62,978 bases of DNA, filler included, from Octopus bimaculoides (GCF_001194135.2; 5 parts of 5 records of this genome joined end to end with filler, not necessarily neighbours in it); one strand, 5' to 3'. Shown: positions 42,640 to 61,590, counted from the whole stretch's first letter. Notes: generated by a model from the letters alone, not told the origin. Numbers and translations are program-made.

Positions 42640-42739
42640 NNNNNNNNNNNNNNNNNNNNNNNNNNNNNNNNNNNNNNNNNNNNTTAATTAATTAANNNNN
42701 NNNNNNNNNNNNNNNNNNNNNNNNNNNNNNNNNNNNNNN
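42640..42739. other. Artificial 100-nt scaffold spacer
   Basis: 44 N, TTAATTAATTAA (42684-42695), 44 N. Confidence 0.92.
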
Positions 42740-42995
42740 CTTACACTCTGATGGGTATTCACATTGACATTACACATCCAACGGAGCATACTGGCTTCAT
42801 TCCTTGCGAGCTTACGTATGTCCTCAGCAGTTACAGCCCATGTTTCACTGCCATGTAGCATGGCTGTTCGTACGCATGCGTCATACAGTCTGCCTTTTAC
42901 TCTGAGTGAGAGTCCCTTTGTCGCCAGCAGGGGTAAGAGCTCTCTAAACTTTGCCCAGGCTATTCTTATTCTAGCAGCTACACTTTCAGCGCACC
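42740..42995 (-). pseudogene. RTE-clade LINE ORF fragment (post-RT region), frame open
   Basis: Minus strand ESVAARIRIAWAKFRELLPLLATKGLSLRVKGRLYDACVRTAMLHGSETWAVTAEDIRKLARNEASMLRWMCNV is a typical RTE signature. Confidence 0.88.
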
Positions 42996-43489
42996 CACAT
43001 ATATATATACATATATATATGATAAAAATGGTGGTGGTGAAGTTTAGTTGCCACTCACAAATGAGTGTGACTTGATAGCGTGTACCATACTTTCACTAAC
43101 TGTTATAGCTGCCTGTGTAGTCACGAGCAGATATAGACACTCTGTTGGGATTCCTATCCTTGACCTAGCAGGTGTCAAGAATGACAGAACTAGACCAGGA
43201 ATTGGTTGGTTGGTTGGTTTTAATTTTCAATCAATTAGTGTGGAAGAGCAATGTGAAATGATGTTGCCCAAGGACATGACATGCTGCTTGGTTTGGTCCA
43301 GGAATTGAACTCATGACCTCTATGGTCATAAGCCTAATATCTAATATGTTAATCATCTGGCTTTGACTTCACAACATGTCCATTATATGAAAGATAAACA
43401 TGTACTAAGAGTCATGTGATGTATTGATATCACGTGACTACCATTTGGTCAAAGAAACAAGATAATTTACCAAATATAGATAATAGATT

Positions 43490-43775
43490 TAGGGCTGCGA
43501 GCTGGCTGAATTGTTAGCACGCCAGGCCAAATGCTTTGCGGTATTTCGTCTGCTGTTATGTTCTGAGTTCAAATTCTGCTGAGGTCGACTTTGCCTTTCA
43601 TTCTTTTGGGGTCAGTTAAATAAGTACCTTGCCTTTCATTCTTTTAGGGTCAGTTAAATAAGTACCAGTTATGCACTGGGTTTTATGTAATTGACTTAAT
43701 CCCTTTGTCTGTCCTTATTTGTTCCCTCTATGTTTAGCCCCCCCCCCTGTGGGCAATAAAGAAATAAATATAGAT
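43490..43775 (+). mobile_element. SINE family B with alternative tail (B2) and a 38-bp internal tandem duplication of the core
   Basis: TTGCCTTTCATTCTTTT(G/A)GGGTCAGTTAAATAAGTACC at 43591-43628 and 43629-43666. Tail CTATGTTTAGCCCC...TGTGGGCAATAAAGAAATA. Confidence 0.85.
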
Positions 43776-44189
43776 AAAAGCGAAAATGTCTTAGTTTTGT
43801 GGATGAACAGCTTGAGTCACTTAAGAAATTAAATGTCTTATGATATGTTGGGTGTCTTGTGATATATTGAGTGTCTTGTGATGTTTTAGGTGTCTTAGAA
43901 AGAAAGAAAGTGGGTGGAAATTGATACCAGATATTGTTTTACAGTAGAAATGAAATGATATGGTCAGGGTCATATAACAATGGAGGAAGCACAATTGAGA
44001 GAATAATAATAAATAGTTCTGAATACATAAAAAGTAGCCAAATAGATATGGTATTGGATTGCTAGTGCCACAGCCAATTGTTTTATTAGTCACTTTCACC
44101 AGATGTCACAACACAACTTTGTTTTGAATTAGTCAACAGAAGGGAAATTCAATGTGGCCACCCAACCTGCTAAAAATAGCAGTAATATC

Positions 44190-44575
44190 TTATCGCCATC
44201 ATTTTAATATTGACTTTTCCATGTTTGCATGGGTTGGACAGAATTTGTTGATGCAGATTTTCTATGACTGGATTCCCTTCCTGTTGCCACCACTCACCTA
44301 TTTCCAAATTAGGTAAAATGCTCCACCTAACCAGATATGTTTTTCATGGAAGATTGGAAATAAATAATATCACCTGTATAGTGGTGATACTTGTTTATAA
44401 CTATCATGCAATGTCAGAACAAGGAGATACTAACACAGACACATAACAGGCTTCTTTCAGTTTCCTTCTTCAGAAAGCTTTGGTTGACACTGGGGCTATA
44501 GTAGAAAACATCTCCATGTACTACACAGGGGGACAGCTTGAAACCATTTGTCTGGGAAGCAAACTTATTAACTAC
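44190..44575 (-). mobile_element. SINE family A head and core with an RTE-like tail
   Basis: 44445-44575 matches the A core (CAGGCTTCTTTCAGTTTCC...GGGGCTATAGTAGAA). 44190-44440 matches the tail of 48600-48830 and ends TTTTCCATGTTTGCATGGGTTGGACAG. Confidence 0.65.
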
Positions 44576-44612
44576 AATAATCCATTAGATAAATAATATA
44601 GTAGTCTTAGTA

Positions 44613-44815
44613 AGGGGGTGAGCTGGCAGAATCGGTAGCACCCCTGGTGAAATGCTTAGTGGTATTTCGTCTGTCTACTTTCTGAGTTCAAATTCCACCG
44701 AGGTCAACTTTGCCTTTCATCCTTTCAGTGTTAATAAATTAAGTACCAAGGTCGATGTAATTGACTTACCCGCTCCCTCAAAATTTCAGGCCTTGTGCTT
44801 ACAGTAGAAAGGAAT
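44613..44815 (+). mobile_element. SINE family B, CpG-decayed
   Basis: GGGTGAGCTGGCAGAATCG...CTGAGTTCAAATTCCACCGAGGTCAACTTTGCCTTTCATCCTTTCAG...AAATTTCAGGCCTTGTGC. Confidence 0.85.
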
Positions 44816-45394
44816 ATAGTAGTCTTAGACATATATCTAAAAAGAAGAAAGGATGGGTGGTCACTGTTGGAATGTTTTAGATCATAGATCTTGATCAGAG
44901 CTGATCTGGACTGAATCTAATCAACAGTAACAACCTCTTCCTTTATTTTGAATTGAGATTAGGTATGTTATAATCATATCATTTGTATTGTTATATTATG
45001 ATTTTATTTCCAATATGGAATTATTTTCAAAACAAGGATGACTGAAGTAATTAATTTAAAAAATAAATAACAGTGTTTATATATTGCTACAATGTAAAGA
45101 ACATGGTTGGTGAGTCCCAAGAATGGTCTAATATTTTCACAGAAAGGAATAATATGCTGTAATTTAAAATGTAATAAAATCTATATATGTGTGTGGTAAT
45201 TATTGTTAAGAATATGGACTAAAGAAACTCTCATTGGAGTAAGTGTGTGGCCAAAGTTTGGTTTCTAGTTGTATTTATTGTTCTGAGGAATAGCTTAGAG
45301 AATGACTTCTAACATTTCAATTTCAGTTGAAAAGATTACCCCCCACCAAAAAAAAAAGTTGATTGTTGATGATTCGTTCACTCTATTTCTTACT

Positions 45395-45605
45395 CAGTGC
45401 TTTGGCTAGTGTACTGGACAAAATGCCGAGTGGCACTTCTTCCAGCTTTTTACATTCTGACTGAGTTTAAATACCACTGAGGTTGACTTTGGCTTTCATC
45501 CTTTCGGGGTTGATAAAATAAGGACCAGTTGAGCACTAGGTTTTTGTGTAATTGACTAATCCCTTTCCCCTAAAACTGATGATCTTATGCCAAAATTAGA
45601 AAGAA
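45395..45605 (+). mobile_element. SINE family B, diverged
   Basis: CTGAGGTTGACTTTGGCTTTCATCCTTTCGGGGTTGATAAAATAAG. Confidence 0.75.
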
Positions 45606-45714
45606 TTATAATTATTCTTTAGCAGTTTTACTCTGGTCTGCTTAAACCCCACTTATCTGGCTTAAAATCACCTCTTTCAGGATTTTTGGTCATGCAAGCT
45701 GTGCAGCAACCTCA

Positions 45715-45910
45715 CTAGTGATGGTGCATGAAAAGACACCCAGTACACACTGTGTAGTGGTTACTGTTAGGAAGTGCATCCAACCATAGAAACCATGCCG
45801 AAGTAGGCAGTGGTGCACAAAGCAGTCTTTAGACTCAGTTGGATCCTGTCAAAACTGTGTAATTTATTATATACCAGCAAAAACATGGATGCTAAATGAT
45901 GATAATGATA
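45715..45910 (+). mobile_element. SINE family E / RTE-type 3' tail fragment
   Basis: CACCCAGTACAC...GTTAGGAAGTGCATCCAACCATAGAAACCATGCC...AAACATGGATGCTAAATGATGATAATGAT, similar to 50790-50950 and 53330-53545. Confidence 0.6.
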
Positions 45911-46134
45911 CCATTTAAATTTCAACTGGTCTGAGATTACCCCAGGATCTCTGATACAAATTTCCTCCTTTAAATGGAATTAAACTACAGCTTTCCATCA
46001 AACTTTCATGTTAATCTATATTGCAAACACCAGCTTAATAAAGACAAAATAATTTCATTGAGTTCTTCATGGTTTTCAAAATTAATTGAAACAAAGGCAG
46101 TGTCATAAATATGGTAAAAAAAAAAAAGGGTTAA

Positions 46135-46355
46135 CCCTTCCATTACCAACCTGGCTGAAACCACCTCTGGCTCTGTAGTACAAATGTTTTATTTTCATAA
46201 GTTTTGAATTAAAATCTTTCACCAAACCTTAGTCACAATTAATGTTCCTAACGCTAGCTTAATGATAACTAAGTTATTTTACTAAATTCTTTGTTATATT
46301 TAAAATAATTGCGAGAAAAACAGAGCATCTCAAAATAAATACAGTAACGAAAGGG
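46135..46355. mobile_element. piggyBac-type MITE, 221 bp
   Basis: TTAA(46131-46134)|CCCTTCCATTACC...GTAACGAAAGGG|TTAA(46356-46359). The 3' end of another copy (~45990-46130, ...ATGGTAA..AAGGG) shares the left TTAA. Confidence 0.8.
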
Positions 46356-46954
46356 TTAAAGTAATCCAAATTAAAAAGCTCTATTAAAATTTCATGTTAA
46401 TTTATGTTCTTAGAAGCATCTCCTCATCGTTAGACCTTACTAATTTTACAAAGTATAACTGTATTGAGTTCTAGAACAATGAGTACTGTCATGGCTAAGT
46501 GGGATCATAGTGTGTATGTGTGTGCATATGTTTGTGCATACGTGCTAGCAAGTAATCTTTACAGTTCCTGTCTATCAAATTCATTAGTCCTGTAAAGTCT
46601 CCTGTTGAATTGAGTTCACTTTGTACTCTGGTTTCTGGTTTCCAGTTATGGCTGTCTGTCTTCATTTGGAATGTGTTTGACGGAAAATAAGAAAGGCAAT
46701 TGACACTATTTATCATGCATGATGAGATACATAAAATATCAAGTTCTGAATTGGCGCCAAGGACTTAGGTTTTTAGGGTGGAGTAAATGCGGACAGTGGA
46801 ATTATATAACTGTTTCCAGAGTTATTAGTAACATTAGAGAAATCAAATTCTTTCAATTATGGATCAATGGAAACACAGTGTGGTTTTTAAAATTATATTT
46901 GTGTTTGGATATTTCTTCCACGAGTAAAAGACTTGAAATGATTTTAGTTAGAAT

Positions 46955-47295
46955 ATTGGCATGGCTGGTTGGTTTACAAGTTTGCTTTGCAACCATGTGG
47001 TTTTGGGTCTAAGTCCGTGGACTGACCAATACCTTTTGAGTGAATTTGATAGAAGGAAACTGTTCAGAATCCTGTCTACATACCTATGTATGTGTGTTTT
47101 TGTTTGTTTATTCTCCCTCCCTCTCATTGCTTGACAACTGGTGTTAGTCTGTTAACATTCCTGTGACTTAACAGTTTAGCCAAAAGAGACTGATAAATAC
47201 ATACCAGACTTACTGTAAGTACAAATGTTGATTTGTTTGACTAACCCTACAAGGTGGTGCTCCAGCATGGCCCTAATGCAATGACTGAAACAATA
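46955..47295 (+). mobile_element. SINE family A, old and CpG-decayed
   Basis: GCATGGCTG...GCTTTGCAACCATGTGGTTTTGGG...TTGCTTGACAACTGGTGTT...GGTGGTGCTCCAGCATGGCC...AATGACTGAAACAA. Confidence 0.75.
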
Positions 47296-47315
47296 GTAAC
47301 TGATATATTTCAATA

Positions 47316-47550
47316 AGGGCGGCGAGCTGGCAAAATCATTAGCACGCTGGGCGAAATGCCTAGTGGTATTTCGTCTGCCATTACATTCTGAGTTTAAATT
47401 CCGCCAAGGTCAACTTCACCTTTCGTCCTTTCAGGGTCGATTAAGTACCAGTTACACACTGGGGTCAATGTAATCAACTTAATCCCTTTGTCAGTCCTTG
47501 TTTGTCCCCTCTATGTTTAGCACCCTGTGGGTAATAAAGAAATAGATAGA
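47316..47550 (+). mobile_element. SINE family B with B2 tail, CpG-decayed
   Basis: GGCGGCGAGCTGGCAAAATC...AAGTACCAGTTACACACTGGGGTCAATGTAATCAACTTAATCCCTTTG...GTGGGTAATAAAGAAATAG. Confidence 0.88.
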
Positions 47551-47654
47551 TTTCTACTCTATACTTTATTTATTCAAAGCCTGAAGACTCTACTCTTCTG
47601 CTATAAACTTTGATATAGTTTCAGTTGTAGTTGTTGTAGTTACTATCAGAACAT

Positions 47655-47860
47655 AGAAGGCAGCAAAGATGGCAGAATCCTCAGCACACCAGACAAAATG
47701 CTTAGCGGTATTTTGCCCATCTTTATGTTCTGCCAAGGTCGACTTTACCTTTCATCTTTTCTGGGTCAATAAAATAAGTACCAGTTATATCATGGGGTCA
47801 ATGAAATTGACTTACACCTTCCCTTGAACTTGCGGGCCTTGTGCCAAAATTTGTAACCAA
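47655..47860 (+). mobile_element. SINE family B
   Basis: AAGGCAGC...AAATGCTTAGCGGTATTT...AAGGTCGACTTTACCTTTCATC...GGGCCTTGTGCCAAAATTTG. Confidence 0.8.
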
Positions 47861-47895
47861 TATTGGAGAATATGAAACAAAGGGTTCAGTTTTAA

Positions 47896-48330
47896 GCATT
47901 TTGATGCTAACCCAACTGAAACTGCCACTGGTTTTATGATGCAAACTTCCTGTTTTAAACTTCTACCAAACTTTCATGTTATGTTCCAAACACCAGTTTA
48001 ATATTCTTTTCTACTCTAGGCACAAAGCCTGAAATTTTGGGGAGGGGTCCAGTTGATTAGATCAACCCCAGTATGCAACTGGTACTTAATTTATCGACCC
48101 CCCCCCCCAATAGGATGAAAGGCAAAGTTGACCTCAGTGGAATTTGAACTCAGAACGTAAAGACAGACAAAATACCGCTAAGCATTTCGTCCAGTGTGCT
48201 AACGTGTCTTCCAGCTCGCCGCCTTACACCAGATAAATATTGACAAAGTTATTTTGCTAAATTCTTTACTATTTTCACAATTAATTGAAACAGTGGCATG
48301 TATTTCAACCGAAATATGGTTATGAAAGGG
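47896..48330. mobile_element. piggyBac-type MITE interrupted by a SINE B insertion (48006-48225, minus)
   Basis: The MITE ends ...ATGGTTATGAAAGGG|TTAA(48331-48334). The SINE is flanked by a candidate 16-bp TSD: ACACCAGTTTAATATT (47990-48005) and ACACCAGATAAATATT (48226-48241). Confidence 0.72.
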
Positions 48331-48461
48331 TTAAAGTAAATGTAGTTTACATAATTTTAATTGAAATTCCAGTTTGTTCTACATGAATTTTATAGTATTA
48401 ACTTTTTATCTGTTGTGGAGGTGCGATAGAGAAATGAAGATATTAAATTTTTTAATTGATA

Positions 48462-48830
48462 GGCATAGGTGTGGCTGTGTGGTTAACAAATTTGCTTTTT
48501 TATCACAGTTTTGAGTTCATTTCCACCGTGTGGTGCTTTGGACAAAGATCTATATAGCCCCAGGCTGATCAAAACTAAAAGAAGCCAGTCATGCATGTGT
48601 ATGTTACTGTCTTCTTGTCTTGAGATCACATGATGGTTGTGAAATGGTTGTCACTGTTATATAAATTATGTCCTTCATTTCTAATCTTCCATGAAAATGT
48701 CAGAGCATAGGTAAATATTACCTTATTTGGAAAAGGTTGAGGGTTGGTTACAGGAAGGGCACTAGCCATAGAAAATCTGCCTCAATGAATTCCATCTGAT
48801 CCATGCAAGCATGGAAAAATGGACAAACTA
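48462..48830 (+). mobile_element. SINE family A head with an RTE-like tail
   Basis: Head GGCATAGGTGTGGCTGTGTGGTTAA and core AAAGAAGCC. Tail GGTTACAGGAAGGGCACTAGCCATAGAAAATCTGCCTCAATGAATTCCATCTGATCCATGCAAGCATGGAAAAATGGAC. Confidence 0.7.
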
Positions 48831-49924
48831 CCAGCTTTAAGGGTTTTCAGTTCAAATCCCCTTGTTTCATTATGCATTGTGGGCCATACACAATGAAACA
48901 TCTATTGTAGGTCATACACAATAAGACATGTACATTTCTGTTTGAAATTCACCAGCTGTATTAGATATCAGCCAGATCTTCTGAAGATATTGACTGGCAT
49001 TGTATTGACGCCATAGATGCAAAGCACCAGGGACAAAAGACCACAGGACCATATATATTCTCCTCCTCGAATACCTAGAACTATGTTAACCTTTTTGTTG
49101 TTGTTCTTTTTATTTCCTTCCTATTCTCAACTGAAAAAAAAGTTGATTAATGAAGAAAAAAAATTTATCCTTGTATAACTTGGGTGTGTAATATTTGATG
49201 ATAGTTAAGGAAGACTGTGAGAAATAAATTTTTCATGTTAGCTAAAGAAAATAATTTGTTTTCATGACTGAATAAATATTTATTTTGTTAGTTATCCTTC
49301 ATTACAGGGAGTGCTGTCCAGAACATTTTCCTTTTTCACTCTCACACTATCACAAACATGAATGTATGTCATGTGTGCGTATGTATGCATATAGTATCTT
49401 CATAAACAGTATATAATGATCATCTGAACTCCCTCCTCCCTCTGCTTCTGTTAATTACCTTAATTACTGCATTGTAATCTCCTTAAATGATGGGAAAATG
49501 CATGTTTGTGTTTGGGTTTTCATTAACGAATAGTGTGGAGCTGCCCTGGATGTTTTTCTTTATCTAGTTCAGTATTTCTCTGTTGTGGGTTCAAATTCTA
49601 CCAGATGTAACCTTACTTTGCATTTTTTGTGTTAGTAAAATTTATACCAGTAATGATTATGATTATGATGGTGATGGTTGTGGTGGTGGTGGTGTTGGTG
49701 GTGATGGTAATGATGATGATGAGCTTATTGTATGCAGTACTGAGGTGGACGACATCGCAACAGAAAAGAGTAAATGGTGGAGATAAAGTGGCAATAAAGA
49801 AGTTGGCAATGAAGGCCAAAAGTACACATGCACTGTACACAGAATAAAGTCATTTTTCTCTGTCCCCACCTCTGGCAGAATGCACACTCACATGAGATAG
49901 TTGCCTCCATAGTATTCACTCTTT

Positions 49925-50045
49925 AGTTAGAGCATTCAGGGAAACTTTGTCGAGACTTGTTCATTCTGTGATGTTGTCTTTCCATCTCTTAGGTTACTTG
50001 CTTCTGTTTCTTTTCCCATTAACCATGCCTTCCAAACTGATCTTG
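49925..50045 (-). pseudogene. RTE-clade LINE C-terminal fragment
   Basis: Minus strand MVNGKRNRSK*PKRWKDNITE*T resembles the GxxxGKRxRGRPxxRWxDNIxEW motif. Confidence 0.55.
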
Positions 50046-50059
50046 CTCATGTATGACAA

Positions 50060-50273
50060 CCCTTTCGATACCAATCTGGTTGAAACTGCTTCTGACTCTG
50101 CATTACAAAATATGTTGTTTTCAAAAGTTCTGGATTAAAATCTTCCACCAAACCACAATTTATGTTCCTAACAAGTTTAATGATAACTAAGTTATTTTAC
50201 TAAATTCTTGTTATATTTCAAATTAATTGAAAGAAACACAGAGCATCTCAACAGGTATATGGTAACAAAAGGG
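50060..50273. mobile_element. piggyBac-type MITE, same family as 46135-46355
   Basis: CCCTTTCGATACC...GGTAACAAAAGGG|TTAA. The internal AATGATAACTAAGTTATTTTACTAAATTCTT is shared with 46135-46355. Confidence 0.8.
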
Positions 50274-50789
50274 TTAAACTGCATCCGGTGGTGAGGTTCC
50301 AGCTTGGGAGTTCTGGAGTTGTGACAGCATGGAGTTGACCCTTAATTATCATTACTTCCAGATCTGTTCTGACCTGGAATGGTAGTACCTATCCGGATCC
50401 TATCTATGGGTTAAACAGATTTTTTTGTTCTGGTAAAATGGTTGAACATCTGTCATGCTTACAGAAAATGTGTGTTCAAGTTTTACAGGCAGTTGCTGAC
50501 TTCTTCCATCCAAGGGGCTTTTAACCCAATATTCTATAGATTTTATCTACTACAAGTTACACTGTGAAATAAAAAAAATATTTACTTTAATTCTTCCAGG
50601 TTCTAAATTCTTATGATGTAAAACAAAAAAACAAGTGATTAAAATTTAAGAAATAAAAATATAAAAACCTATGCTTAATAAAGCCACCTATATTCTGTCC
50701 AGCAAAAACCCTGTTCTGGCCCCTTTCCTTCATACTTTAAACCTCTGTAGCCCAAATCAGTCAAAGGTCTTAGTGTTGTGAATTACATG

Positions 50790-50950
50790 GTGACCTTGTT
50801 AATGTTGGCACTATGAAACAAACACCTAGTGCAACCTGTTGGTATTAGAAGGGGCATCCAGCCATAGAAACCATGCCAGAGCAAATAGGAGTTGAATGGC
50901 ACTTGATGCAGTTCTTCCCCTCAATCCATGCTGATATGAAAGACAGATGC
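50790..50950 (+). mobile_element. SINE family E / RTE-type tail fragment
   Basis: GGTATTAGAAGGGGCATCCAGCCATAGAAACCATGCC...CAATCCATGCTGATATGAAAGACAGATG. Confidence 0.55.
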
Positions 50951-51059
50951 TACCAGGTCGGGTGAGATATGGAGAAATGCTGCAGTGTGTTTGCTGCATT
51001 CACCAGTTGTGAGTTTCTGCTCATGTCATCCTGAGCAGCTCTCCAGCTAGTGTCCTAGT

Positions 51060-51260
51060 CAGTCTCCGTCTCCACATGATATTTCCTCATCTATTGTGAC
51101 CACATAGCATGTGACTGACCAACCAACACAAGCTGTCACCTCAGCCAGATCCTCAGGGAAGAGAACATGATGCACAGGATCCAATTTGGAAAATTGAGCA
51201 ACATGACCAAACAGTCTGAGTTGATGCTCCCGAATCATACAAGTAACAGGATATATCCCA
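51060..51260 (-). pseudogene. RTE-clade LINE C-terminal fragment
   Basis: VTCMIREHQLRLFGHVAQFSKLDPVH matches the RxRxLRWFGHVxR motif. Confidence 0.7.
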
Positions 51261-51919
51261 GTTTCTGAGTTGAGTTGATTATGGGCTACAAACATTATAA
51301 TGAGGACAATTGTTTATCTTTATTTTATCAATCAAACTTGTGTATAACAAAATTACGAATAATGTTTTTCAACCTGATGAAGTGTTGGTACAAATTTTGT
51401 AAAGCTTTAAATTATATTTTAAAAAGTGTATGCTGTACATACATACATCTTGCAGTGTGCTGCAGTGCACCATTTGAATAGCACTGCCCTTGATAGATAA
51501 AAAAGGAACTGGAAAGTCATCACCGGAATGTCTTTGATCAATGACCTGCACAATCATGACTGACTTGGTTCTAAGTAACAATTACAACTATGATTTAATG
51601 AAACAACAATAAAAATTGATAAACAACACTATTCAGTTCTGCTTGAGTAAATTTGTGGTATCAAAGTAGCTGATTGAAGCCATTATTATCACGACAAGCC
51701 TGTTTTCATTGTAAAATTGGTGTCCTAAAATGTAGGTCTTATATATGTGATCTTATCATTAACTCTTTTCATACTAACCCCCCCCCCCCTGTGATAATGC
51801 TGCTATTGAGATTTTCCACACTTCAGTCTTAACTCTTTCTTTATCCATTCCAAAGAGAAGAAGCACAAGACTGAAGACATTTAGCTCAATGAAGGATGTG
51901 CCCCAAACAAAAGCTAGAC

Positions 51920-52125
51920 AATCCTTTCTACTAAAGGCACAAGGCCTGAAATGTTGGCGGAGGGGACTAGTCAATTACATCAACCCCAGTGTTTCACTGG
52001 TACTTAATTTATTGACCCTGAAAGGATGAAAGGCAAAGTCAACCATGGCAGAATTTAAACTCAGAACGTAAGAACGGGTAAAATATCGCTAAGCGTTTCA
52101 TCCAGCGTGCTAACAATTCGGCTAG
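51920..52125 (-). mobile_element. SINE family B, CpG-decayed
   Basis: AAGGCACAAGGCCTGAAAT...ACTGGTACTTAATTTATTGACCCTGAAAGGATGAAAGGCAAAGTCAACC. Confidence 0.85.
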
Positions 52126-52470
52126 ACAATGCCATATGTGTCAGACTCTTCAATAGCACCGTCCTACCTGTGCTTTTATATGCAAGTGAGACCTGGGAAG
52201 TGCATTCGAAATGAGATAATTCCAGAATGAAGCAGAGTGAATGATGCAATTACAGAGCATCAAAAGTGTAAGTTCTGCTGAGTTGGAATGTCTCATGGTT
52301 CACAGACAGGTGGAACCATGCAGTTGCTGAGATGTATCCAAGAGATCAAAAAAGGCCACTTGGAAGGCCTCCATGACAATGGGAAGATGATTTAGTCAAA
52401 CAATTTGGGTCAATATAGAAAAGAATGGCACAACCAAGACAAAATTGGAAGCACATTGTGACCAGTGAGG
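52125..52470 (+). pseudogene. RTE-clade LINE 3' fragment with an internal deletion
   Basis: RLFNSTVLPVLLYASETW and RWNHAVAEMYPRDQKRPLGRPP*QWEDDL. Confidence 0.8.
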
Positions 52471-52940
52471 TATAACAGCATCTGATAGTCTGGTCAATAC
52501 TGTGACACTCTCTTCTCAGTCCAGATCTCAGCAATAATGGAGCCATTTCCCCTTGTCTTCTTTTGACTTTCTATCTTTCCAAACATGGTTGTATGTGCAA
52601 GTGACCCTTTCATTCCATTTGATGTGTCCAAACCACTGCATTTTTTGACTTGATGTTGTTTCTGGGTCTTATTTCCCAATCAACTACTACAATTCCTTTT
52701 CATTTAACCCCTGACCCCTTTTTTTTCACTTCTGTACAATTGGCCTATATTTTTTTAATATGTAGCCCTTGCAATGAATAAAGATTTCCTACATAATGAC
52801 AATCCCCATCAATGACATTTCTTTTTTTTTTATTGTAGGGAGAGTTGGGGAAGTGACTGTATATGATTTATGTTTTCAAAGCTCTTATGAAGTTATAAGC
52901 TGATAATTAGTATCACTGTGCCAAAGTGAAATAGTAAAAT

Positions 52941-53545
52941 GTCGTCGTCGCCGTCGTTGTTATTTAACGTCTGCCTTCCATGCTAGCATGGGTGGGATGG
53001 TTTCACAAGATCCAGCTCCAGTCCAGTGGCACTGGCAACGACCTCGCTTGAATGATTTTCTAACGTGCCACCAGCACAAGTGCCAGAAGGCGACACTGGT
53101 AATGATGGTGCTATTTATGGGGCACTAGCACGGAAGCCAGACAGCTGCTCTGGCAATGAACTCGCACGGACAGTGCTGTTAGTGCTCCACTGGCCCAGGT
53201 GCCAGTCATTGAATATGGTTCAATTACGATTTCGATTTCACTTGCCCCAACAGGTCTTCGCAAGCAGTGTTTATGTCCAATGAAAGACAGGTTAGCATGG
53301 GTGCCAATCACCATTTTGAGCGTGGCTGTTGCCAGTACCGTGTGACTGGCCCTCGTGCCGGTGGCACGTAAAAGCACCCAATACACTCTCGGAGTGGTTG
53401 TCATTAAGAAGGGCATCCAGCTTTAGAAACTCTGCCAGATCAGATTGGAGCCTGGTGCAGCCTTCTGGCTTGCCAGTCCTCAGTTAAATTGTCCAGCCCA
53501 TGCTAGCATGGAAAGCGGACGTTAAACGATGATGATGATGATGAT
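52941..53545. mobile_element. Two RTE-tailed (family E) SINE-like units back-to-back, forming 30-bp terminal inverted repeats
   Basis: TTTAACGTCTGCCTTCCATGCTAGCATGGG (52963-52992) versus CCCATGCTAGCATGGAAAGCGGACGTTAAA (53497-53526), 28/30 complementary. Outer tails are (GTC)n and (GAT)n. Confidence 0.75.
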
Positions 53546-54364
53546 ATATATATANNNNNNNNNNNNNNNNNNNNNNNNNNNNNNNNNNNNNNNNNNNNNN
53601 NNNNNNNNNNNNNNNNNNNNNNNNNNNNNNNNNNNNNNNNNNNNNNNNNNNNNNNNNNNNNNNNNNNNNNNNNNNNNNNNNNNNNNNNNNNNNNNNNNNN
53701 NNNNNNNNNNNNNNNNNNNNNNNNNNNNNNNNNNNNNNNNNNNNNNNNNNNNNNNNNNNNNNNNNNNNNNNNNNNNNNNNNNNNNNNNNNNNNNNNNNNN
53801 NNNNNNNNNNNNNNNNNNNNNNNNNNNNNNNNNNNNNNNNNNNNNNNNNNNNNNNNNNNNNAAAGAAGTACAAAATGAAGAAAATAATATATTAAAAAAA
53901 TGATATATAAAAAAATAAATATACCAATACATTATATTGTCTTTGAGCTTTTGAAGTTCAATGGTAGTTCATGTATATAATGGTTGGAAAAATAAGGATG
54001 CATGAGAATTGAGAGTTGTGTTAGGTTTAAAAAAAGAGTTAAAAGTTTGTGTTAAGCAGGAAGTGTGGTGTCAAAACAGGAAGTGTGTGTAAGGGGAGAC
54101 AAATGTTTTTAGTTGGAGTTATGAACTCTTTTTCAACGGGAAGTTTATGTCTGTTCCTAGAGAAATAAGGTGTTAAGAAATGGTTGGAATTTCTCTATGA
54201 AAAAATTCTCCTTCTTGATTCTTTCTTGTGTGGAGATTCTGTCTTTACATTGGTAGAAAGGGAANNNNNNNNNNNNNNNNNNNNNNNNNNNNNNNNNNNN
54301 NNNNNNNNNNNNNNNNNNNNNNNNNNNNNNNNNNNNNNNNNNNNNNNNNNNNNNNNNNNNNNNN

Positions 54365-55125
54365 GAGGGTAATTTTCTCTTCCTCTTTGACTAGGACTGC
54401 CTCCACCACCCACACAGGATCCACGTCCGCTGGGACCCTTGTTATATTAATTCTGGACATTCTCATCCCCATATAGGTGGGGATGAGCGCCACGTCTTCA
54501 GTTTTCAGAGTCTCTACGGAATGCTTTTGTGCCATTTCCTTGTTGGCAAACATTACTTCCACTGTACCAAACTTCTTGCCTCTTATCATATACATAACGT
54601 CGCTCCATATTTCCTTCAAACACCTTTCAATCTTCTTTTCTGTAAATCTTTCGATTTTTCTTTTTTGTAAACAATAAATTTTAAAATTATTGTTTTCTGT
54701 TTTTTCTCTAGCATAAATTGCTCCGGTGGTTGTATTTGAACCACGCTATCTTTCACTTCCATCATTTTTTTATATTTTATGTAGTCCGACTTGTTCGTCG
54801 ACAGCTGCCGGGTTCGACCCCCAGCTGCCAACGCAAAACTTTTTTTTTCCTTTCTCGCCTGCTCAGTCTGGATGCTAAGCGCATCGATAATCCTTTTGGT
54901 CACAATACTTTCTGACAAAGTTGGGAAATCTTCTTGTGAAAGCTCTGACGAGCTTTCCGACACGTCTCCAAATATTTCATACATCCTGCTGTGCGCTTTG
55001 GTAACGGGGGAATTACAAATTCCTTTTTCGGGGGAATCCACTTCTGTGCCAACGTTAGGCCTCCTGCTAGACGACATTCTTCCCCCCAACGGGGGAATAA
55101 ACAAACGTGTGCTTTCTACAAGCAC
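54365..55125 (-). pseudogene. Probable ORF1 (gag-like/RRM) of an L1/Tx1-type LINE, one frameshift near 54620, interrupted by a gap
   Basis: ORF 54616-55125 (disordered, S/E-rich then K-rich) is continued in another frame by KEIWSDVMYMIRGKKFGTVEVMFANKEMAQKHSVETLKTEDVALIPTYMGMRMSRINITRVP. No splice structure is evident. The family assignment is from recalled resemblance only. Confidence 0.5.
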
Positions 55126-55775
55126 TCAATGTTTTCAAATAAAAACTCCAACAGTTAGAATTTTAACAGAACTGCAGTTAATAAAAAAGTAGTTATTATA
55201 AATAATAACACTAATAACCAGCAATTTTCACCACGAACACATGTGCGACGCGTAACCAACAAACTCACAGAGACGAAATACCGCTAAGCATTTCGACCGG
55301 TATGCTAACGTTTCTGCCAGCTCGCTGTCTTACAATAATTATATATTAAAGTATAACCTGTCCTGCTATATTAAGTAACTGAGTCGTTCTCTTCTAGAGA
55401 TAATGATAGCACAACTAAAATTGTATTCAAATATATTCAAGTCCTAATATAAATGGTTTGACAAGTGTCGTCTTATGTAATCGGTGACACGGTCACCCGG
55501 GAAAGTTTTTCCTTCTTTTTTTTATAGTCTTGGGTCAACCAAATCATCGAGTGAAATTTAGTAGAAGAAAAACATGTGAAAACCTGCAGACAGAAAGTAT
55601 GTAAGAGCAATCTTGTTCTTAGGTGATAGCGTCAAGAACACTAGTCGATTTCAAGAACCATTACTTGGTTCTTGAATTTATTTAGTAGAATCGGCTCCGT
55701 TAGCAGCATTGGGATGAGATTTCCAGTTTAAAGATAACATCGTTCTGGTCCTCCCAACAGGGGAAATGTCCTTAA

Positions 55776-56599
55776 CACGTTGCCTGCCACAGGACATCGA
55801 TATGATCTGCTTCTATTTGCCAAAAGAGTTTTATTAATTTTCTCAAATCAGAAAGCTGAAATATTTTGTGTGGTGGTATATAGGTACATAATACCTGTAA
55901 TTACACTACAATGACGTGATAGGAGTTATCTCATAGTAATGCAAAATGCTCAGATTGGTTTGCTATGAAGGCTTTGAGGGTATAATATTCATTATTTGAC
56001 GATGTCTCTTCATTGTATAATGTTTTCTTTATTTTTTCAGATTTATAAAGAACTATTATAAATTTTGATTTGTAATATATAAGATGCCAAAAAACCTTTC
56101 CAATGAAAATATTGCTGGAATGCTTCAGGAACTCGCGGAAAATGAACTATTGGAAGATGATATCTTAGAGTCAGAAAATGAATACTCAGATGCTTTGGAT
56201 AAAAATCATGTAGCAAGTACCAGTGGAAGTAATACTAGTGACGCCAGTTCTACTGACGAAGATGAACAATTAGTTGCTCGAGGTTGTAAGAGACAACACA
56301 GTTCTGCTACAGCAAGTTCTCCGGCACCAACTGCATCGACATCTAATACTTATACTTGATATATATAGGTGTCTTACAAAATATATTTCCTGGCAGGTGC
56401 CATGATACGGGTTAACTCGTATCATTGGGCAAATAAAGGGCGTCTTTAGTGTTTCCACAACACATTCACAATGTTAGTTCCAGACGCCAGTTCATTTTAA
56501 GCGTGTTACAATAAAATGGACCTCTATGAGTATGCTCGTACCTGGCAAAATTGTATAGATTGCCAACTTCGAGATAACTCGTAGTCAGCAGTCAACGTG
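55776..56599 (+). mobile_element. Internally deleted piggyBac-family transposon, 824 bp, with both ends
   Basis: TTAA(55772-55775)|CACGTTGCCTGC...GCAGTCAACGTG|TTAA(56600-56603). Subterminal inverted repeats GAGTTATCTC (55923-55932) and GAGATAACTC (56571-56580). Near-palindrome GATACGGGTTAACTCGTATC at ~56404-56423. Confidence 0.85.
56084..56359 (+). pseudogene. Acidic, Ser-rich N-terminal region of a piggyBac transposase (91 aa, catalytic domain deleted)
   Basis: MPKNLSNENIAGMLQELAENELLEDDILESENEYSD...SSTDEDEQ lies inside the TTAA-flanked element; piggyBac transposases have such acidic disordered N-termini. Confidence 0.65.
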
Positions 56600-56885
56600 T
56601 TAAATGAATCATGGATGTTACCCTTCTTTTTCTAACTAAATTAGTAAAAAAATATATAAAAACAGCCAACTAAATCAATGTCTTTTGTCGCATACTTCTC
56701 ACTCATAAAATAAATTCCTACGTTCATTCATTAGTTAATTGATTAAATAATGCAAACGTTTATTAATGAGGCAAAAACTCACAATAACCTGGAACAAACA
56801 GGTCTTTCTTGCTCTTTTCTTTCTTTCTTTCATTTCTCTTTCTTTCATTTCTCTTTCTTTCTCTTCTTTTTCTCTTCTCTTCACT

Positions 56886-56928
<43 letters not shown>

Positions 56929-56994
56929 CTTTCTCTTTCTCTCTTTCCTCACTTTTATCCATTCTCTCTTTTTGCCTTTATATGTCTCTCATGT

Positions 56995-57270
56995 GAAGGC
57001 GCGTGACATAGTGATTAGGGATATTCAGCTCACAATCGTAAAGTCGTGAGTTCGATTCCCGGCAGCGCGTTGTGTCCTTGAGCAAGATACTTTATTTCAC
57101 GTTGCTCTAGTCCACTCAGCTGAGAAAAGTGAGCCGTACTTGTAATTCAAAAGGGCCAACCATGTCGCATTCTGTGTCATGCTCGATCTCCCTGACAACT
57201 ACGTTAAGGGTAGGCGTATCTGTGGAGAACTCAGCCACTTGCACGTTGATTTCAAGAGCAAGCTGTTCCG
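56995..57270 (+). mobile_element. SINE family D
   Basis: tRNA head GAAGGCGCGTGACATAGTGATTAGG...GAGTTCGATTCCCGG, core GTGTCCTTGAGCAAGATACTTTAT, and a tail shared with family C. Confidence 0.8.
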
Positions 57271-57589: not shown

Positions 57590-58143
57590 TGGTTTCAAAT
57601 TTTGGCACAAGGCCAGCAATTTTGGCGGGAGGGGGCTAAGTCGATTACATCGACCCCATTGCTCACATGGGTACTTATTTTATCGACTCTGAAAGAATGA
57701 AAAGCAAAGTCGATCCCAGCGGAATTTGAACTCAGAACGCGCAAATGGACGAAGCACCGCTGAGCATTTCGCCTGTTGCGCCCACGACGCTGCCAGCTTG
57801 CCACCTTAATTCCGACCTCGGCTGAATTTGAACTCAGAACGTAAAGACGGACGAAGTACCGCTAAGCATTCCGCCCGGCGTGCTAACGTTTCTCCCAGCT
57901 CGCCACCTTAATAGTGGTAACAGTATTTTTTTTTTCTACTCTAGGCACAAAGCTCGACATTTTGGGGTAAAGGACCAGTCGATTAGATCGACTCCAGTAT
58001 GCAACTGGTACTTAATTTACCGACCCTGAAAGGATGAAAGGCAAAGTCGACCTCGGTGGAATTTGAACTCGGAACGTAAAGACACATGAAATACCGCTAA
58101 GTATTTCGCCCGGCGTGCGAACGTTTCTACCAGCTCGCCATCT
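57590..58143 (-). mobile_element. Head-to-tail cluster of SINE family B (about 57590-57808, 57812-57909, 57932-58143)
   Basis: Repeated GAATTTGAACTC(A/G)GAAC...CCGCTAAGCATT...CCAGCTCGCCA blocks with CpGs largely intact. Confidence 0.88.
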
Positions 58144-60019: not shown

Positions 60020-60395
60020 TTCTTTCTATTCTAGGCACAAGGCCTTAAATTTTGAGGGAGAAGACTTGTCGATTACACCGACTCCAGTGTCTTACTGGTA
60101 CTTAATTTATCGACTCCGAAAGGATAAAAGGCAAAGTCGATCTCGGCGGAATTTGAACTCAGAACGTAACGCCAGACGAAATACCGCTAAGCATTTCGCC
60201 CGGCGTGCTAACGTTTCTTATTCCTTTATTGCCTACAAGGGGCTAAACATAGAGGGACAAACAAGAACAGACAAAGGGAAAGGATGAAAGGCAAAGTCCG
60301 ACCTTGGCGGAATTTGAACTATGAACGTAGCGACGGGCGAAATACCGGTAAGCATTTCGCCCGGCGTGCTAACGTTTCTGGCAGCTGGCCGCCTT
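60020..60395 (-). mobile_element. SINE family B head-to-tail dimer (one copy with tail B2, one with tail B1)
   Basis: 60020-60216 is a B1 copy. 60217-60280 is the B2 tail (TTATTGCCTACAAGGGGCTAAACATAGAGG) joined to a second core and head at 60280-60395. Confidence 0.85.
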
Positions 60396-60984: not shown

Positions 60985-61590
60985 GGAACTAGTCAGTTAT
61001 ATCGGTGCGGGCAGTTTATTATAATGGACCCTGGATGGATGAAAGGCAATGTTGATCTCAGTGGGGATTTGAAATCTAAACGTAATGAGTGGGAAAGGAT
61101 ATCGCAAGGGTTTTTTGTCCGACTTTCTAATGATTATGTTACCCAACCTAAAGGTCACGATATAGTAATTATTTCACAAGGCCTTGGAAATTTCGGGGGA
61201 AGGGGGCTAGTCGATTACATCGACCCCCAATGCGTAACTTGAGCTTATTTCATCGACCCAGAAAGGATGAAAGGCAAAGTCGACCTCGGCGGAATTTGAA
61301 CTCAAGAGCGATGCGGCAAACGAAATATCGCTAAGCATTTCACTCGACGTGCTAACGATTCTGCCAGCTCACCGCCTGAATAATAAATAAATAAATAAAT
61401 AAATAAATAATAATAATAATTTCATATTTTGGCACAAAGCCAGCAATTTCGGGGCGGGAGTAAGCCGACTGCACCGCCCCCGACTTCGAAAGGTTGAAAG
61501 AAAAAGTCGGCTTCAGCGGAATTTGAACTCGGAACGTAAAGACAGACGAATGCCGCTAAACACTTTGCCCGGCCTGCTAACGATTTTGCT
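60985..61590 (-). mobile_element. Three SINE family B copies head-to-tail (about 60985-61140, 61165-61378, 61425-61590)
   Basis: GAAAGGATGAAAGGCAAAGTCGACCTCGGCGGAATTTGAACTC and variants, separated by a (TAAA)n/(TAA)n tract. Confidence 0.85.

What the first reader, a model, noticed from the sequence alone, without database searches (positions are those of the whole stretch)
43050..52900. A ~10 kb domain of CpG-specific decay, suggesting a fossil germline-methylated region and probably a hidden gene body
Seen: family B SINEs here differ from intact copies elsewhere (57932-58143, 60050-60216, 61200-61378) mainly at CpGs. In the 47316-47550 copy I count about 11 CpG-to-TpG/CpA changes (ATCGTT>ATCATT, GCCGGG>GCTGGG, AGCGGT>AGTGGT, TACGTT>TACATT, GTCGAC>GTCAAC, TTCGGG>TTCAGG, GTCGAT>GTCAAT and others) with few other differences. 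The 43490, 44613 and 51920 copies show the same pattern, and unique sequence here is visibly CpG-poor. Established: invertebrate methylation is mosaic and concentrated on bodies of broadly expressed genes, and 5mC deaminates to T. Inference: the SINEs act as built-in methylation reporters and mark this segment as intronic sequence of an unannotated constitutive gene. Caveat: the left edge lies close to an artificial spacer (42640-42739), so the boundary may be an assembly join.
Basis: partly seen in the sequence, partly recalled or inferred. Interest (0 to 1): 0.7.

Follow-up and report, generated by a model that had tools for sequence, protein, structure and literature searches.

The report
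CpG-depleted (once-methylated) stretch of octopus DNA
About 11 kb of this octopus sequence has lost three quarters of its CpG sites by the C-to-T decay typical of germline DNA methylation, and the next block has not; this mosaic is real but already well known in octopus, and no gene could be shown inside the stretch.

Summary
From the piece's left edge (42740) to 52940, CpG observed/expected is 0.24 (83 seen, 345 expected). GpC is normal (0.93) and TpG/CpA are in excess. In 54365-57270 CpG o/e is 0.85 at the same G+C (37-38%). Seven copies of a tRNA-like SINE in the poor stretch keep only 29 of 102-110 ancestral CpG sites, at about 9% non-CpG divergence. Copies of the same SINE in CpG-normal DNA of two other Octopus loci keep 46 of 69 although they are more diverged. 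So this is CpG-specific decay, not age.

The apparent edge at about 52,900 is the end of a young CpG-rich repeat (52941-53545). With that repeat masked, the step falls at 54,423, on an assembly gap (54265-54364).

The best reading is a domain of long-term germline CpG methylation, as published for Octopus bimaculoides. The "hidden gene body" part is plausible but unproven:
- No exon-like ORF in the stretch matches any of 5.8 billion protein clusters or Pfam.
- No strand asymmetry marks transcription.
- The locus could not be placed in an annotated genome.

The thing is real, ordinary, and of an already known kind.

The parts
42740..52940 (.). Core of the CpG-depleted domain. It is cut by the piece's left edge, so the true left boundary is unknown.
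   Evidence: CpG 83 observed against 345 expected (o/e 0.24); GpC 0.93; TG o/e 1.37; CA o/e 1.26; G+C 0.37. The non-repeat fraction has o/e 0.16.
52941..53545 (.). Young, CpG-rich composite repeat. It has 44-nt inverted ends (52963-53006 and 53483-53526) and triplet-repeat tails, and it runs into gap 1. It creates the apparent domain edge at about 52,900.
   Evidence: CpG o/e 0.63 at G+C 0.51. Its 3' 200 nt belong to an abundant element, with 30 or more copies in L001/L002. This copy keeps 7 of 9 consensus CpGs at 6% divergence. Young copies inside other CpG-poor DNA also keep their CpGs.
53555..53861 (.). Assembly gap 1 (307 N).
53862..54264 (.). CpG-poor stretch between the two gaps; probably still part of the depleted domain.
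   Evidence: 1 CpG against 6.9 expected. P(1 or fewer) is 0.026 if o/e were 0.8 and 0.51 if it were 0.24.
54265..54364 (.). Assembly gap 2 (100 N). The most likely position of the real switch from CpG-poor to CpG-normal DNA.
   Evidence: With 52941-53545 masked, the change point moves to 54,423 (support 54,229-54,487, log-likelihood ratio 36.9; o/e 0.23 on the left, 0.90 on the right).
54365..57270 (.). CpG-normal block used as the internal contrast.
   Evidence: CpG o/e 0.85 (89 of 105). Sub-blocks are 0.86, 0.94, 0.60 and 0.89. There is no TG/CA excess. The non-repeat fraction has o/e 0.66.
43490..43770 (+). SINE copy (family F1, tRNA-like head) with an internal 38-nt tandem duplication at 43591-43666.
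   Evidence: 5 of 16 CpG sites intact; non-CpG divergence 7.8%.
44610..44817 (+). SINE F1 copy.
   Evidence: 4 of 16 CpG sites intact; non-CpG divergence 5.0%.
45413..45597 (+). SINE F1 copy, 5'-truncated and the most diverged.
   Evidence: 1 of 14 CpG sites intact; non-CpG divergence 19%.
47316..47548 (+).
   Evidence: 7 of 16 CpG sites intact and 9 changed to TG or CA. 8 transitions and no transversions in 124 other sites.
47657..47864 (+). SINE F1 copy.
   Evidence: 2 of 16 CpG sites intact; non-CpG divergence 10.4%.
48000..48227 (-). SINE F1 copy.
   Evidence: 7 of 16 CpG sites intact; non-CpG divergence 6.2%.
51903..52125 (-). SINE F1 copy.
   Evidence: 3 of 16 CpG sites intact; non-CpG divergence 12.6%.
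55267..55348 (-). 5' fragment of SINE F1 in the CpG-normal block; the only in-piece control copy.
   Evidence: 6 of 8 head CpG sites intact at 3 of 44 non-CpG differences. The same sites in the poor-domain copies are 19 of 54 intact (Fisher p = 0.05).
42742..42996 (-). C-terminal fragment of a non-LTR retrotransposon reverse transcriptase, cut by the piece's edge.
   Evidence: 88% aa identity to an O. bimaculoides RT-domain protein (P0002) and 54-79% to others.
54712..55110 (-). ORF of a repeated element in the CpG-normal block.
   Evidence: 76% aa identity to the first 131 residues of the NCBI O. bimaculoides model 'PDCD6IP, partial'. That first exon lies 57 kb upstream of the real exons.
56162..56356 (+). 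N-terminal fragment of a piggyBac-type transposase gene.
   Evidence: 74% aa identity over 65 residues to an O. bimaculoides PiggyBac-derived protein (P0007). The rest of that protein is not found downstream.

Best explanation
The piece is Octopus nuclear DNA. From at least 42740 to about 54264 it lies in a domain whose CpGs have been methylated in the germline for a long time. 5-methylcytosine deaminates to thymine, so every sequence resident there has steadily turned CpG into TpG or CpA. That includes unique DNA, old SINEs and old retrotransposon fragments. Recent insertions such as the repeat at 52941-53545 have not yet decayed. The adjoining block 54365-57270 has stayed unmethylated and keeps near-expected CpG.

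Shown here: the depletion, its CpG specificity, its independence from sequence age and G+C, and its dependence on residence time. Inferred: that 5mC is the cause, and that the domain is a transcribed gene body. In octopus, gene bodies are where most methylation sits, so an intron of a broadly expressed gene is the most likely setting (about even odds). No gene was detected. The confidence given is for the methylation-domain reading, not for the gene-body sub-claim.
For: **Composition**
- CpG o/e is 0.24 against 0.85 at equal G+C. GpC is normal. The TG/CA surplus (+377) is of the order of the CpG deficit (-262).
- The change-point log-likelihood ratio is 35-37.

**SINE F1 as a neutral reporter**
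- In the window's poor domain 29 of 102 CpG sites are intact at 8.7% non-CpG divergence.
- Copies in CpG-normal flanks of O. bimaculoides and O. vulgaris loci L001 and L002 have 46 of 69 intact at about 14% divergence.
- The relative loss rate k is 14.2 against 2.5 (likelihood-ratio p = 8e-15). Copies in other CpG-poor flanks give k = 17.
- A second repeat family (F2) gives the same direction: k = 8.9 against 3.9, p = 0.03.

**Other lines**
- Non-repeat DNA has o/e 0.16 against 0.66.
- Calibration: the well-supported exon-intron region of the ALIX/PDCD6IP gene in L001 (67.4-85.8 kb) has CpG o/e 0.23-0.45, the same range as here.
- The organism is Octopus: 74-88% aa identity to O. bimaculoides transposon proteins.
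- Published methylome: under 10% of CpGs are methylated, enriched in introns and exons of about 14,000 broadly expressed genes and low in intergenic DNA and transposons (PMC9476566).
Against: **Limits on the methylation reading**
- No methylation data were available. 5mC is inferred from its mutational footprint only.
- The SINE CpG sites were inferred from the decayed copies themselves, which is partly circular. The CpG-normal copies elsewhere do carry CG at those sites.
- The in-piece control is one 80-nt fragment (p = 0.05).
- The real right boundary falls on a 100-N gap, so adjacency of the two blocks rests on scaffolding.

**Against the gene-body sub-claim**
- No exon, Pfam domain or Rfam family was found in the domain.
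- CpG decay shows no TG/CA strand bias (27 against 34).
- The T>A skew is no stronger than in the CpG-normal block.
- In L001 and L002, tens of kb of CpG-poor DNA lie outside convincing gene models.
Confidence: 0.8

Rival explanations
1. The domain is methylated, or was, but is not a gene body. It would be an intergenic or repeat-rich stretch methylated for another reason, such as repeat-directed or heterochromatin-associated methylation, or spreading from a neighbouring gene. This rivals only the gene-body sub-claim of the best explanation, not the methylation reading.
For: - No exon or transcript evidence.
- At least 38% of the domain is repeat-derived.
- The octopus methylome paper reports that intergenic repeats are somewhat more methylated than repeat-free intergenic DNA.
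- CpG-poor DNA lies outside convincing gene models in L001 (1-5 kb, 12-30 kb, 39-53 kb) and L002 (5-20 kb).
Against: - Published data put the great majority of methylated CpGs in introns and exons, and find transposon methylation low overall.
- Non-repeat DNA here is even more depleted (o/e 0.16) than the repeats (0.35). That argues for domain-wide rather than repeat-targeted methylation.
- An 11-kb intron without exons is unremarkable: the ALIX locus used here has introns of several kb.
Confidence: 0.3
2. Age artefact. The CpG-poor part is simply older sequence, and the CpG-normal part is made of recent insertions, with no regional difference in CpG mutability.
For: - The apparent edge at 52,942 is indeed the end of a young CpG-rich repeat.
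- The CpG-normal block contains transposon-derived ORFs.
- Young repeat copies keep their CpGs even in CpG-poor surroundings.
Against: - After normalising by non-CpG divergence, CpG sites are lost 5-6 times faster in CpG-poor than in CpG-normal surroundings (k = 14-17 against 2.5, p = 8e-15 to 1e-22).
- Copies in CpG-normal DNA are the more diverged ones.
- The SINE fragment at 55267 is as diverged as the poor-domain copies yet keeps 6 of 8 CpGs. At the poor-domain rate, 6 or more of 8 has P of about 0.03 (my own binomial arithmetic from the rate).
- The piggyBac relic at 56162-56356 is truncated and only 74% identical to its nearest relative, yet has o/e 0.6.
Confidence: 0.04
3. Methylation-independent regional mutation bias, for example low recombination or weak GC-biased gene conversion, or replication-timing effects that lower CpG.
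For: No direct methylation measurement was possible. CpG o/e is only a proxy.
Against: - G+C is the same in both blocks (0.37 and 0.38), and GpC is unaffected.
- The deficit is specific to CpG and is mirrored by TG/CA surplus.
- Non-CpG C/G transitions in the SINEs are low (0.047 per base) while CpG transitions are 0.31.
- The species has a working DNMT1/UHRF1 system and mosaic methylation.
Confidence: 0.06
4. The step is an assembly artefact. The CpG-normal block beyond gap 2 comes from a different locus wrongly scaffolded here.
For: With the young repeat masked, the change point falls on the 100-N gap at 54265-54364. The O. bimaculoides locus L001 also carries many gaps.
Against: - This concerns only the boundary, not the domain, which is 10.2 kb of gap-free sequence.
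- Switches between o/e 0.2-0.4 and 0.7-0.9 on a scale of a few kb recur in the O. bimaculoides comparison locus L001. Such a step therefore needs no misjoin.
Confidence: 0.1

Closest known systems
Mosaic (gene-body) DNA methylation of Octopus bimaculoides and other invertebrates, and its CpG o/e footprint
   Same: The footprint matches. There is a domain-wide CpG deficit with normal GpC and surplus TpG/CpA, next to CpG-normal DNA. The values match those of a broadly expressed gene (ALIX region, o/e 0.23-0.45). [quoted passage not shown] CpG depletion is a standard proxy for historical germline methylation in invertebrates (PMC8857923 and PMC8857917).
   Different: Nothing differs in kind. In this case the gene itself is not demonstrated, and no 5mC measurement is attached.
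Repeat copies used as neutral reporters of CpG decay (divergence-from-consensus analyses of transposons; the classic Alu CpG-decay analyses in primates, from my own knowledge)
   Same: CpG sites of a SINE decay several-fold faster than its other sites where the DNA is methylated, and the loss grows with the copy's age.
   Different: In mammals nearly all copies are methylated, so the reporter measures age. In this mosaic genome the same reporter separates methylated from unmethylated neighbourhoods (k = 14-17 against 2.5).
tRNA-derived octopus SINEs (OR1, OR2 and OK of Ohshima and Okada 1994; OR1 is classed as a CORE-SINE, PMC4824008)
   Same: Family F1 is about 210-280 nt, interspersed, present in both orientations, and found in O. 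bimaculoides and O. vulgaris loci as well. By eye its 5' part has tRNA-like A-box and B-box motifs, and its centre resembles a CORE domain.
   Different: Identity with a named family was not tested, because no SINE library was on hand. ARAGORN and Rfam do not call a tRNA in any copy.

Membership tests
Historically germline-methylated, CpG-depleted domain (invertebrate mosaic methylation) | CpG observed/expected far below 1 while GpC is about 1, at a G+C equal to neighbouring CpG-normal DNA | tested here: met
   o/e 0.24 against 0.85; GpC 0.93 against 1.00; G+C 0.37 against 0.38.
Historically germline-methylated, CpG-depleted domain (invertebrate mosaic methylation) | Reciprocal surplus of the deamination products TpG and CpA | tested here: met
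   TG +233 and CA +144 against CG -262 in 42740-52940. There is almost none in 54365-57270.
Historically germline-methylated, CpG-depleted domain (invertebrate mosaic methylation) | CpG-specific hypermutability in neutral resident sequences, beyond what their age explains | tested here: met
   SINE F1: CpG transitions 0.31 per base against 0.047 for other C/G. Relative loss rate 14.2 against 2.5 in CpG-normal Octopus DNA, p = 8e-15. Family F2 goes the same way, p = 0.03.
Historically germline-methylated, CpG-depleted domain (invertebrate mosaic methylation) | 5-methylcytosine actually present on the interval in germ cells | not testable with these tools
   No bisulfite or nanopore data can be overlaid, and the locus could not be placed in the reference genome.
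Gene body (intron) of a broadly expressed gene | Exons or other coding signal inside or flanking the interval | tested here: not met
   No hit for any ORF segment of 33 aa or more of 42740-53560, on either strand, among 5.8 billion protein clusters. No Pfam domain. A positive control shows that O. bimaculoides proteins are in the database. An exon-free intron stretch would give the same result.
Gene body (intron) of a broadly expressed gene | Transcription-associated strand asymmetry (base skews; unequal TG and CA decay) | tested here: inconclusive
   T>A skew is +0.038 (z = 3.1), against +0.075 on the ALIX sense strand, but +0.092 in the CpG-normal block. TG:CA decay is 27:34 here and 8:11 in ALIX, so the test has no power.
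Gene body (intron) of a broadly expressed gene | Lies within an annotated or RNA-supported transcription unit | not testable with these tools
   No eukaryotic genome search is available, and five exact-ORF look-ups found nothing.
tRNA-derived SINE of Octopus (OR1/OR2/OK type) | Short interspersed multi-copy element shared by Octopus species | tested here: met
   8 copies in the piece, 14 in L001 (O. bimaculoides) and 5 in L002 (O. vulgaris), in both orientations.
tRNA-derived SINE of Octopus (OR1/OR2/OK type) | 5' part recognisable as a tRNA; sequence match to a named family | tested here: inconclusive
   ARAGORN and Rfam find no tRNA. The box-like motifs were seen by eye only. No SINE library or published consensus could be retrieved.

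The most novel reading that the evidence does not exclude
The domain is a long-term germline-methylated block with no gene in it. That would be a case of gene-independent domain methylation in a mosaic invertebrate genome. Alternatively it marks a real but still unannotated housekeeping transcription unit, which divergence-normalised SINE CpG loss could find genome-wide without any methylation data.
Probability: 0.2. Interest if true: 0.35.

Novelty: already known. Interest (0 to 1): 0.15.

Why it matters
This adds nothing new about methylation biology. CpG depletion as the footprint of germline methylation, and mosaic gene-body methylation in octopus, are both published.

The practical points are modest:
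- In octopus, divergence-normalised CpG loss in the abundant SINEs separates methylated-type from unmethylated-type neighbourhoods cleanly (about 6-fold). It could serve as a sequence-only annotation layer.
- Young repeat insertions and assembly gaps can fake or hide domain edges. CpG o/e boundaries should be called after masking young repeats.
- CpG-poor DNA in the comparison loci extends beyond convincing gene models. "CpG-poor" should therefore not be read as "gene" without RNA evidence.

Tried and rejected
- **Tandem duplication of about 3.9 kb.** Repeat spacings suggested it. Self-BLAST shows only dispersed SINE and repeat copies, so I rejected it.
- **Rfam and ARAGORN** on the piece found nothing relevant.
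- **Pfam.** Scans of all stop-to-stop segments of 35 aa or more in six frames gave no family at E <= 0.1.
- **More SINE copies.** The SINE pattern is absent from the metagenome and viral collections, and a SINE string is absent from the paper library.
- **Placing the locus.** Five ORFs used as exact-protein look-ups were not on record.
- **Exon search.** Concatenated ORF segments of the CpG-poor domain, run against 5.8 billion clusters, gave no hit on either strand.
- **Transcription-strand signals** (T/A and G/C skews, TG against CA decay in oriented repeats) did not discriminate, even in the ALIX control.
- **RT-like fragments seen by eye.** The one at 52143-52367(+) has only weak support: four RT proteins align there at E = 0.035-0.25. 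The one at 51059-51295(-) has none, so neither is listed as a part.
I rejected about 52,900 in favour of gap 2, after masking the young repeat.

Full report
**What the piece is.** Only 42740-57270 is genome. It contains two runs of N, at 53555-53861 and 54265-54364. Three transposon-derived ORF fragments identify the source as an Octopus genome, and show that the protein database used below holds octopus proteins:
- a reverse-transcriptase tail at 42742-42996(-), 88% aa identical to an O. bimaculoides protein;
- an ORF at 54712-55110(-), 76% identical to the first exon of an O. bimaculoides gene model;
- a piggyBac N-terminus at 56162-56356(+), 74% identical to an O. bimaculoides protein.

**Checking the observation: composition.**
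- In 1-kb windows CpG o/e is 0.12-0.44 from 42740 to about 53200 and 0.75-1.05 from 54240 onwards. GpC stays near 1.
- Block totals are 83 CpG against 345 expected (0.24) in 42740-52940, and 89 against 105 (0.85) in 54365-57270. G+C is 0.37 and 0.38.
- The poor block carries +233 TpG and +144 CpA over expectation, against a deficit of 262 CpG. The normal block shows no such surplus.
- A one-change-point Poisson model puts the step at 52,942 with a log-likelihood ratio of 35.
- DNA that matches neither the piece's own repeats nor 100 kb of other Octopus sequence is even poorer: o/e 0.16, against 0.66 in the normal block.

**Checking the observation: the SINEs.**
- Seven copies of one SINE family (F1) lie in the poor block, and a 5' fragment lies in the normal block.
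- From the alignment I inferred 16 ancestral CpG sites. Each shows a CG/TG/CA mixture, and all but one retain CG in at least one copy.
- Pooled, 29 of 110 CpG sites are intact and 65 show TG, CA or TA. Only 9.6% of the other positions differ. Per base, CpG transitions are 0.31 against 0.047 for non-CpG C/G transitions.
- The fragment at 55267 in the normal block keeps 6 of 8 sites, against 19 of 54 for the same sites in the poor block (p = 0.05).

- L001: 95.8 kb of O. bimaculoides around the ALIX/PDCD6IP gene.
- L002: 20.9 kb of O. vulgaris.

For each F1 copy I scored CpG-site retention, non-CpG divergence, and CpG o/e of the 1.5-kb flanks with repeats masked.
- Copies in CpG-normal flanks keep 52 of 77 sites at 14.4% divergence.
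- Copies in CpG-poor flanks keep 51 of 227 at about 10%.
- I fitted retention = exp(-k x divergence). The fit gives k = 14.2 for the window's poor block, 17.1 for other CpG-poor flanks and 2.5 for CpG-normal flanks. The likelihood-ratio test gives p = 8e-15 for window-poor against external-normal, and p = 2e-22 overall.
- A second abundant 200-nt repeat (F2), with 9 consensus CpGs, goes the same way: k = 8.9 against 3.9, p = 0.03.

CpGs in this block were lost 5-6 times faster than in CpG-normal Octopus DNA for the same amount of other change.

**Where the domain ends.**
- The change point at 52,942 is the first base of a roughly 600-nt composite repeat (52941-53545). The repeat has 44-nt inverted ends and triplet-repeat tails, and it runs into gap 1.
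- Its F2 part is young: 6% divergence, 7 of 9 CpGs intact. Equally young F2 and F1 copies inside CpG-poor DNA of L001 also keep their CpGs. So this repeat says nothing about the domain.
- Behind gap 1, 53862-54264 again has 1 CpG against 6.9 expected (P = 0.026 under o/e 0.8).
- With the repeat masked, the change point moves to 54,423 (support 54,229-54,487), which is on gap 2.
- The domain is therefore at least about 11.5 kb. It is open to the left, because the piece's edge cuts it. Its right edge is hidden in a 100-N gap. The adjacency of the CpG-normal block depends on the scaffold, but similar switches occur within L001.

**What it most likely is.** The signature is a CpG-only deficit, TG/CA surplus, equal G+C, time-dependent decay of resident repeats and sharp mosaicism. 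That is the established footprint of germline cytosine methylation. It fits the published octopus methylome (PMC9476566):
- they cluster in introns and exons of a subset of about 14,000 genes with broad expression;
- methylation is low in intergenic DNA and transposons.

As a calibration, the well-supported exon-intron part of ALIX in L001 (67.4-85.8 kb) has CpG o/e 0.23-0.45. That is the range seen here.

**The 'hidden gene' inference.** I could not support it directly.
- Every stop-to-stop segment of 33 aa or more in 42740-53560, on both strands, was searched against 5.8 billion protein clusters. Recognisable RT and low-complexity segments were left out. There was no hit at E <= 1e-3.
- Pfam and Rfam found nothing.
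- T>A skew (+0.038) has the sign of the ALIX sense strand (+0.075). The CpG-normal block has +0.092, so the skew is not diagnostic.
- Oriented CpG decay is symmetric here (27 TG, 34 CA) and in ALIX (8, 11).
- The locus could not be placed in an annotated assembly.
- CpG-poor stretches in L001 (1-5, 12-30 and 39-53 kb) and L002 (5-20 kb) lie outside convincing gene structure. The L001 model is itself chimeric, with a transposon-derived first exon 57 kb upstream.

An exon-free 11-kb piece of intron would produce exactly these negatives. The gene-body reading therefore stays the most likely setting by prior (about even odds), but it is not a finding.

**Comparison with what is known, and novelty.** This is an instance of mosaic invertebrate methylation read through CpG o/e, a standard proxy (PMC8857923 and PMC8857917). 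Using repeat copies as decay reporters is also established practice. The SINE resembles the tRNA-derived octopus SINEs of Ohshima and Okada (OR1 is a CORE-SINE, PMC4824008), but I could not test family identity. Nothing here departs from known kinds.

**Verdict.**
- Observation: confirmed, with corrected boundaries.
- Interpretation: half supported. Methylation-type decay is supported. The gene is not shown.
- Novelty: already known.
- Interest: low.

Noticed in passing
L001 10001-10387 against L001 67405-85817 (O. bimaculoides CM046606.1): The NCBI model 'programmed cell death 6-interacting protein, partial' starts with a 129-aa exon. That exon belongs to a repeated-element ORF family (76% aa identical to window 54712-55110(-)) and sits in a CpG-rich patch 57 kb upstream of the real BRO1/ALIX exons. 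The model is probably chimeric.
   Followed up: partly
window 52941-53545: A composite repeat of about 600 nt with 44-nt inverted ends (52963-53006 and 53483-53526) and (CGT)n / (GAT)n tails. Its last 200 nt are an abundant short element with 30 or more copies in 100 kb of L001/L002, and its inner parts recur next to such copies (L001 31415-31771, L002 16382-16650). Its class (SINE, MITE or foldback) was not determined.
   Followed up: partly
window 43591-43666: An exact-looking 38-nt tandem duplication (2.0 copies, 97% match) inside the SINE copy at 43490-43770.
   Followed up: no
window 54365-54750(-) and 54616-55125(-): Two overlapping ORFs of the same repeated element in different frames. 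The downstream one (124 aa, running into gap 2) has no database relative. They may be one ORF split by a frameshift.
   Followed up: no
window 46133-46360, 50058-50278, 48222-48339, 46027-46099; and 44215-44463 inverted against 48572-48818: Two further dispersed repeat families inside the CpG-poor block (72-81% identity between copies). Neither was classified.
   Followed up: no
window 56803-56947: A 145-nt pyrimidine-rich (TC / TCTT) microsatellite in the CpG-normal block.
   Followed up: no
L001 whole locus: CpG o/e alternates between 0.2-0.45 and 0.7-0.9 in blocks of 5-15 kb, across what is annotated as a single 57-kb intron. Either methylation history is patchy within it, or, more likely, that 'intron' is intergenic or holds other units.
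   Followed up: no
window 52143-52367(+): A weak reverse-transcriptase-like stretch. Four different RT proteins align there at homologous positions with E = 0.035-0.25. It is probably a very old retrotransposon relic inside the CpG-poor block.
   Followed up: partly
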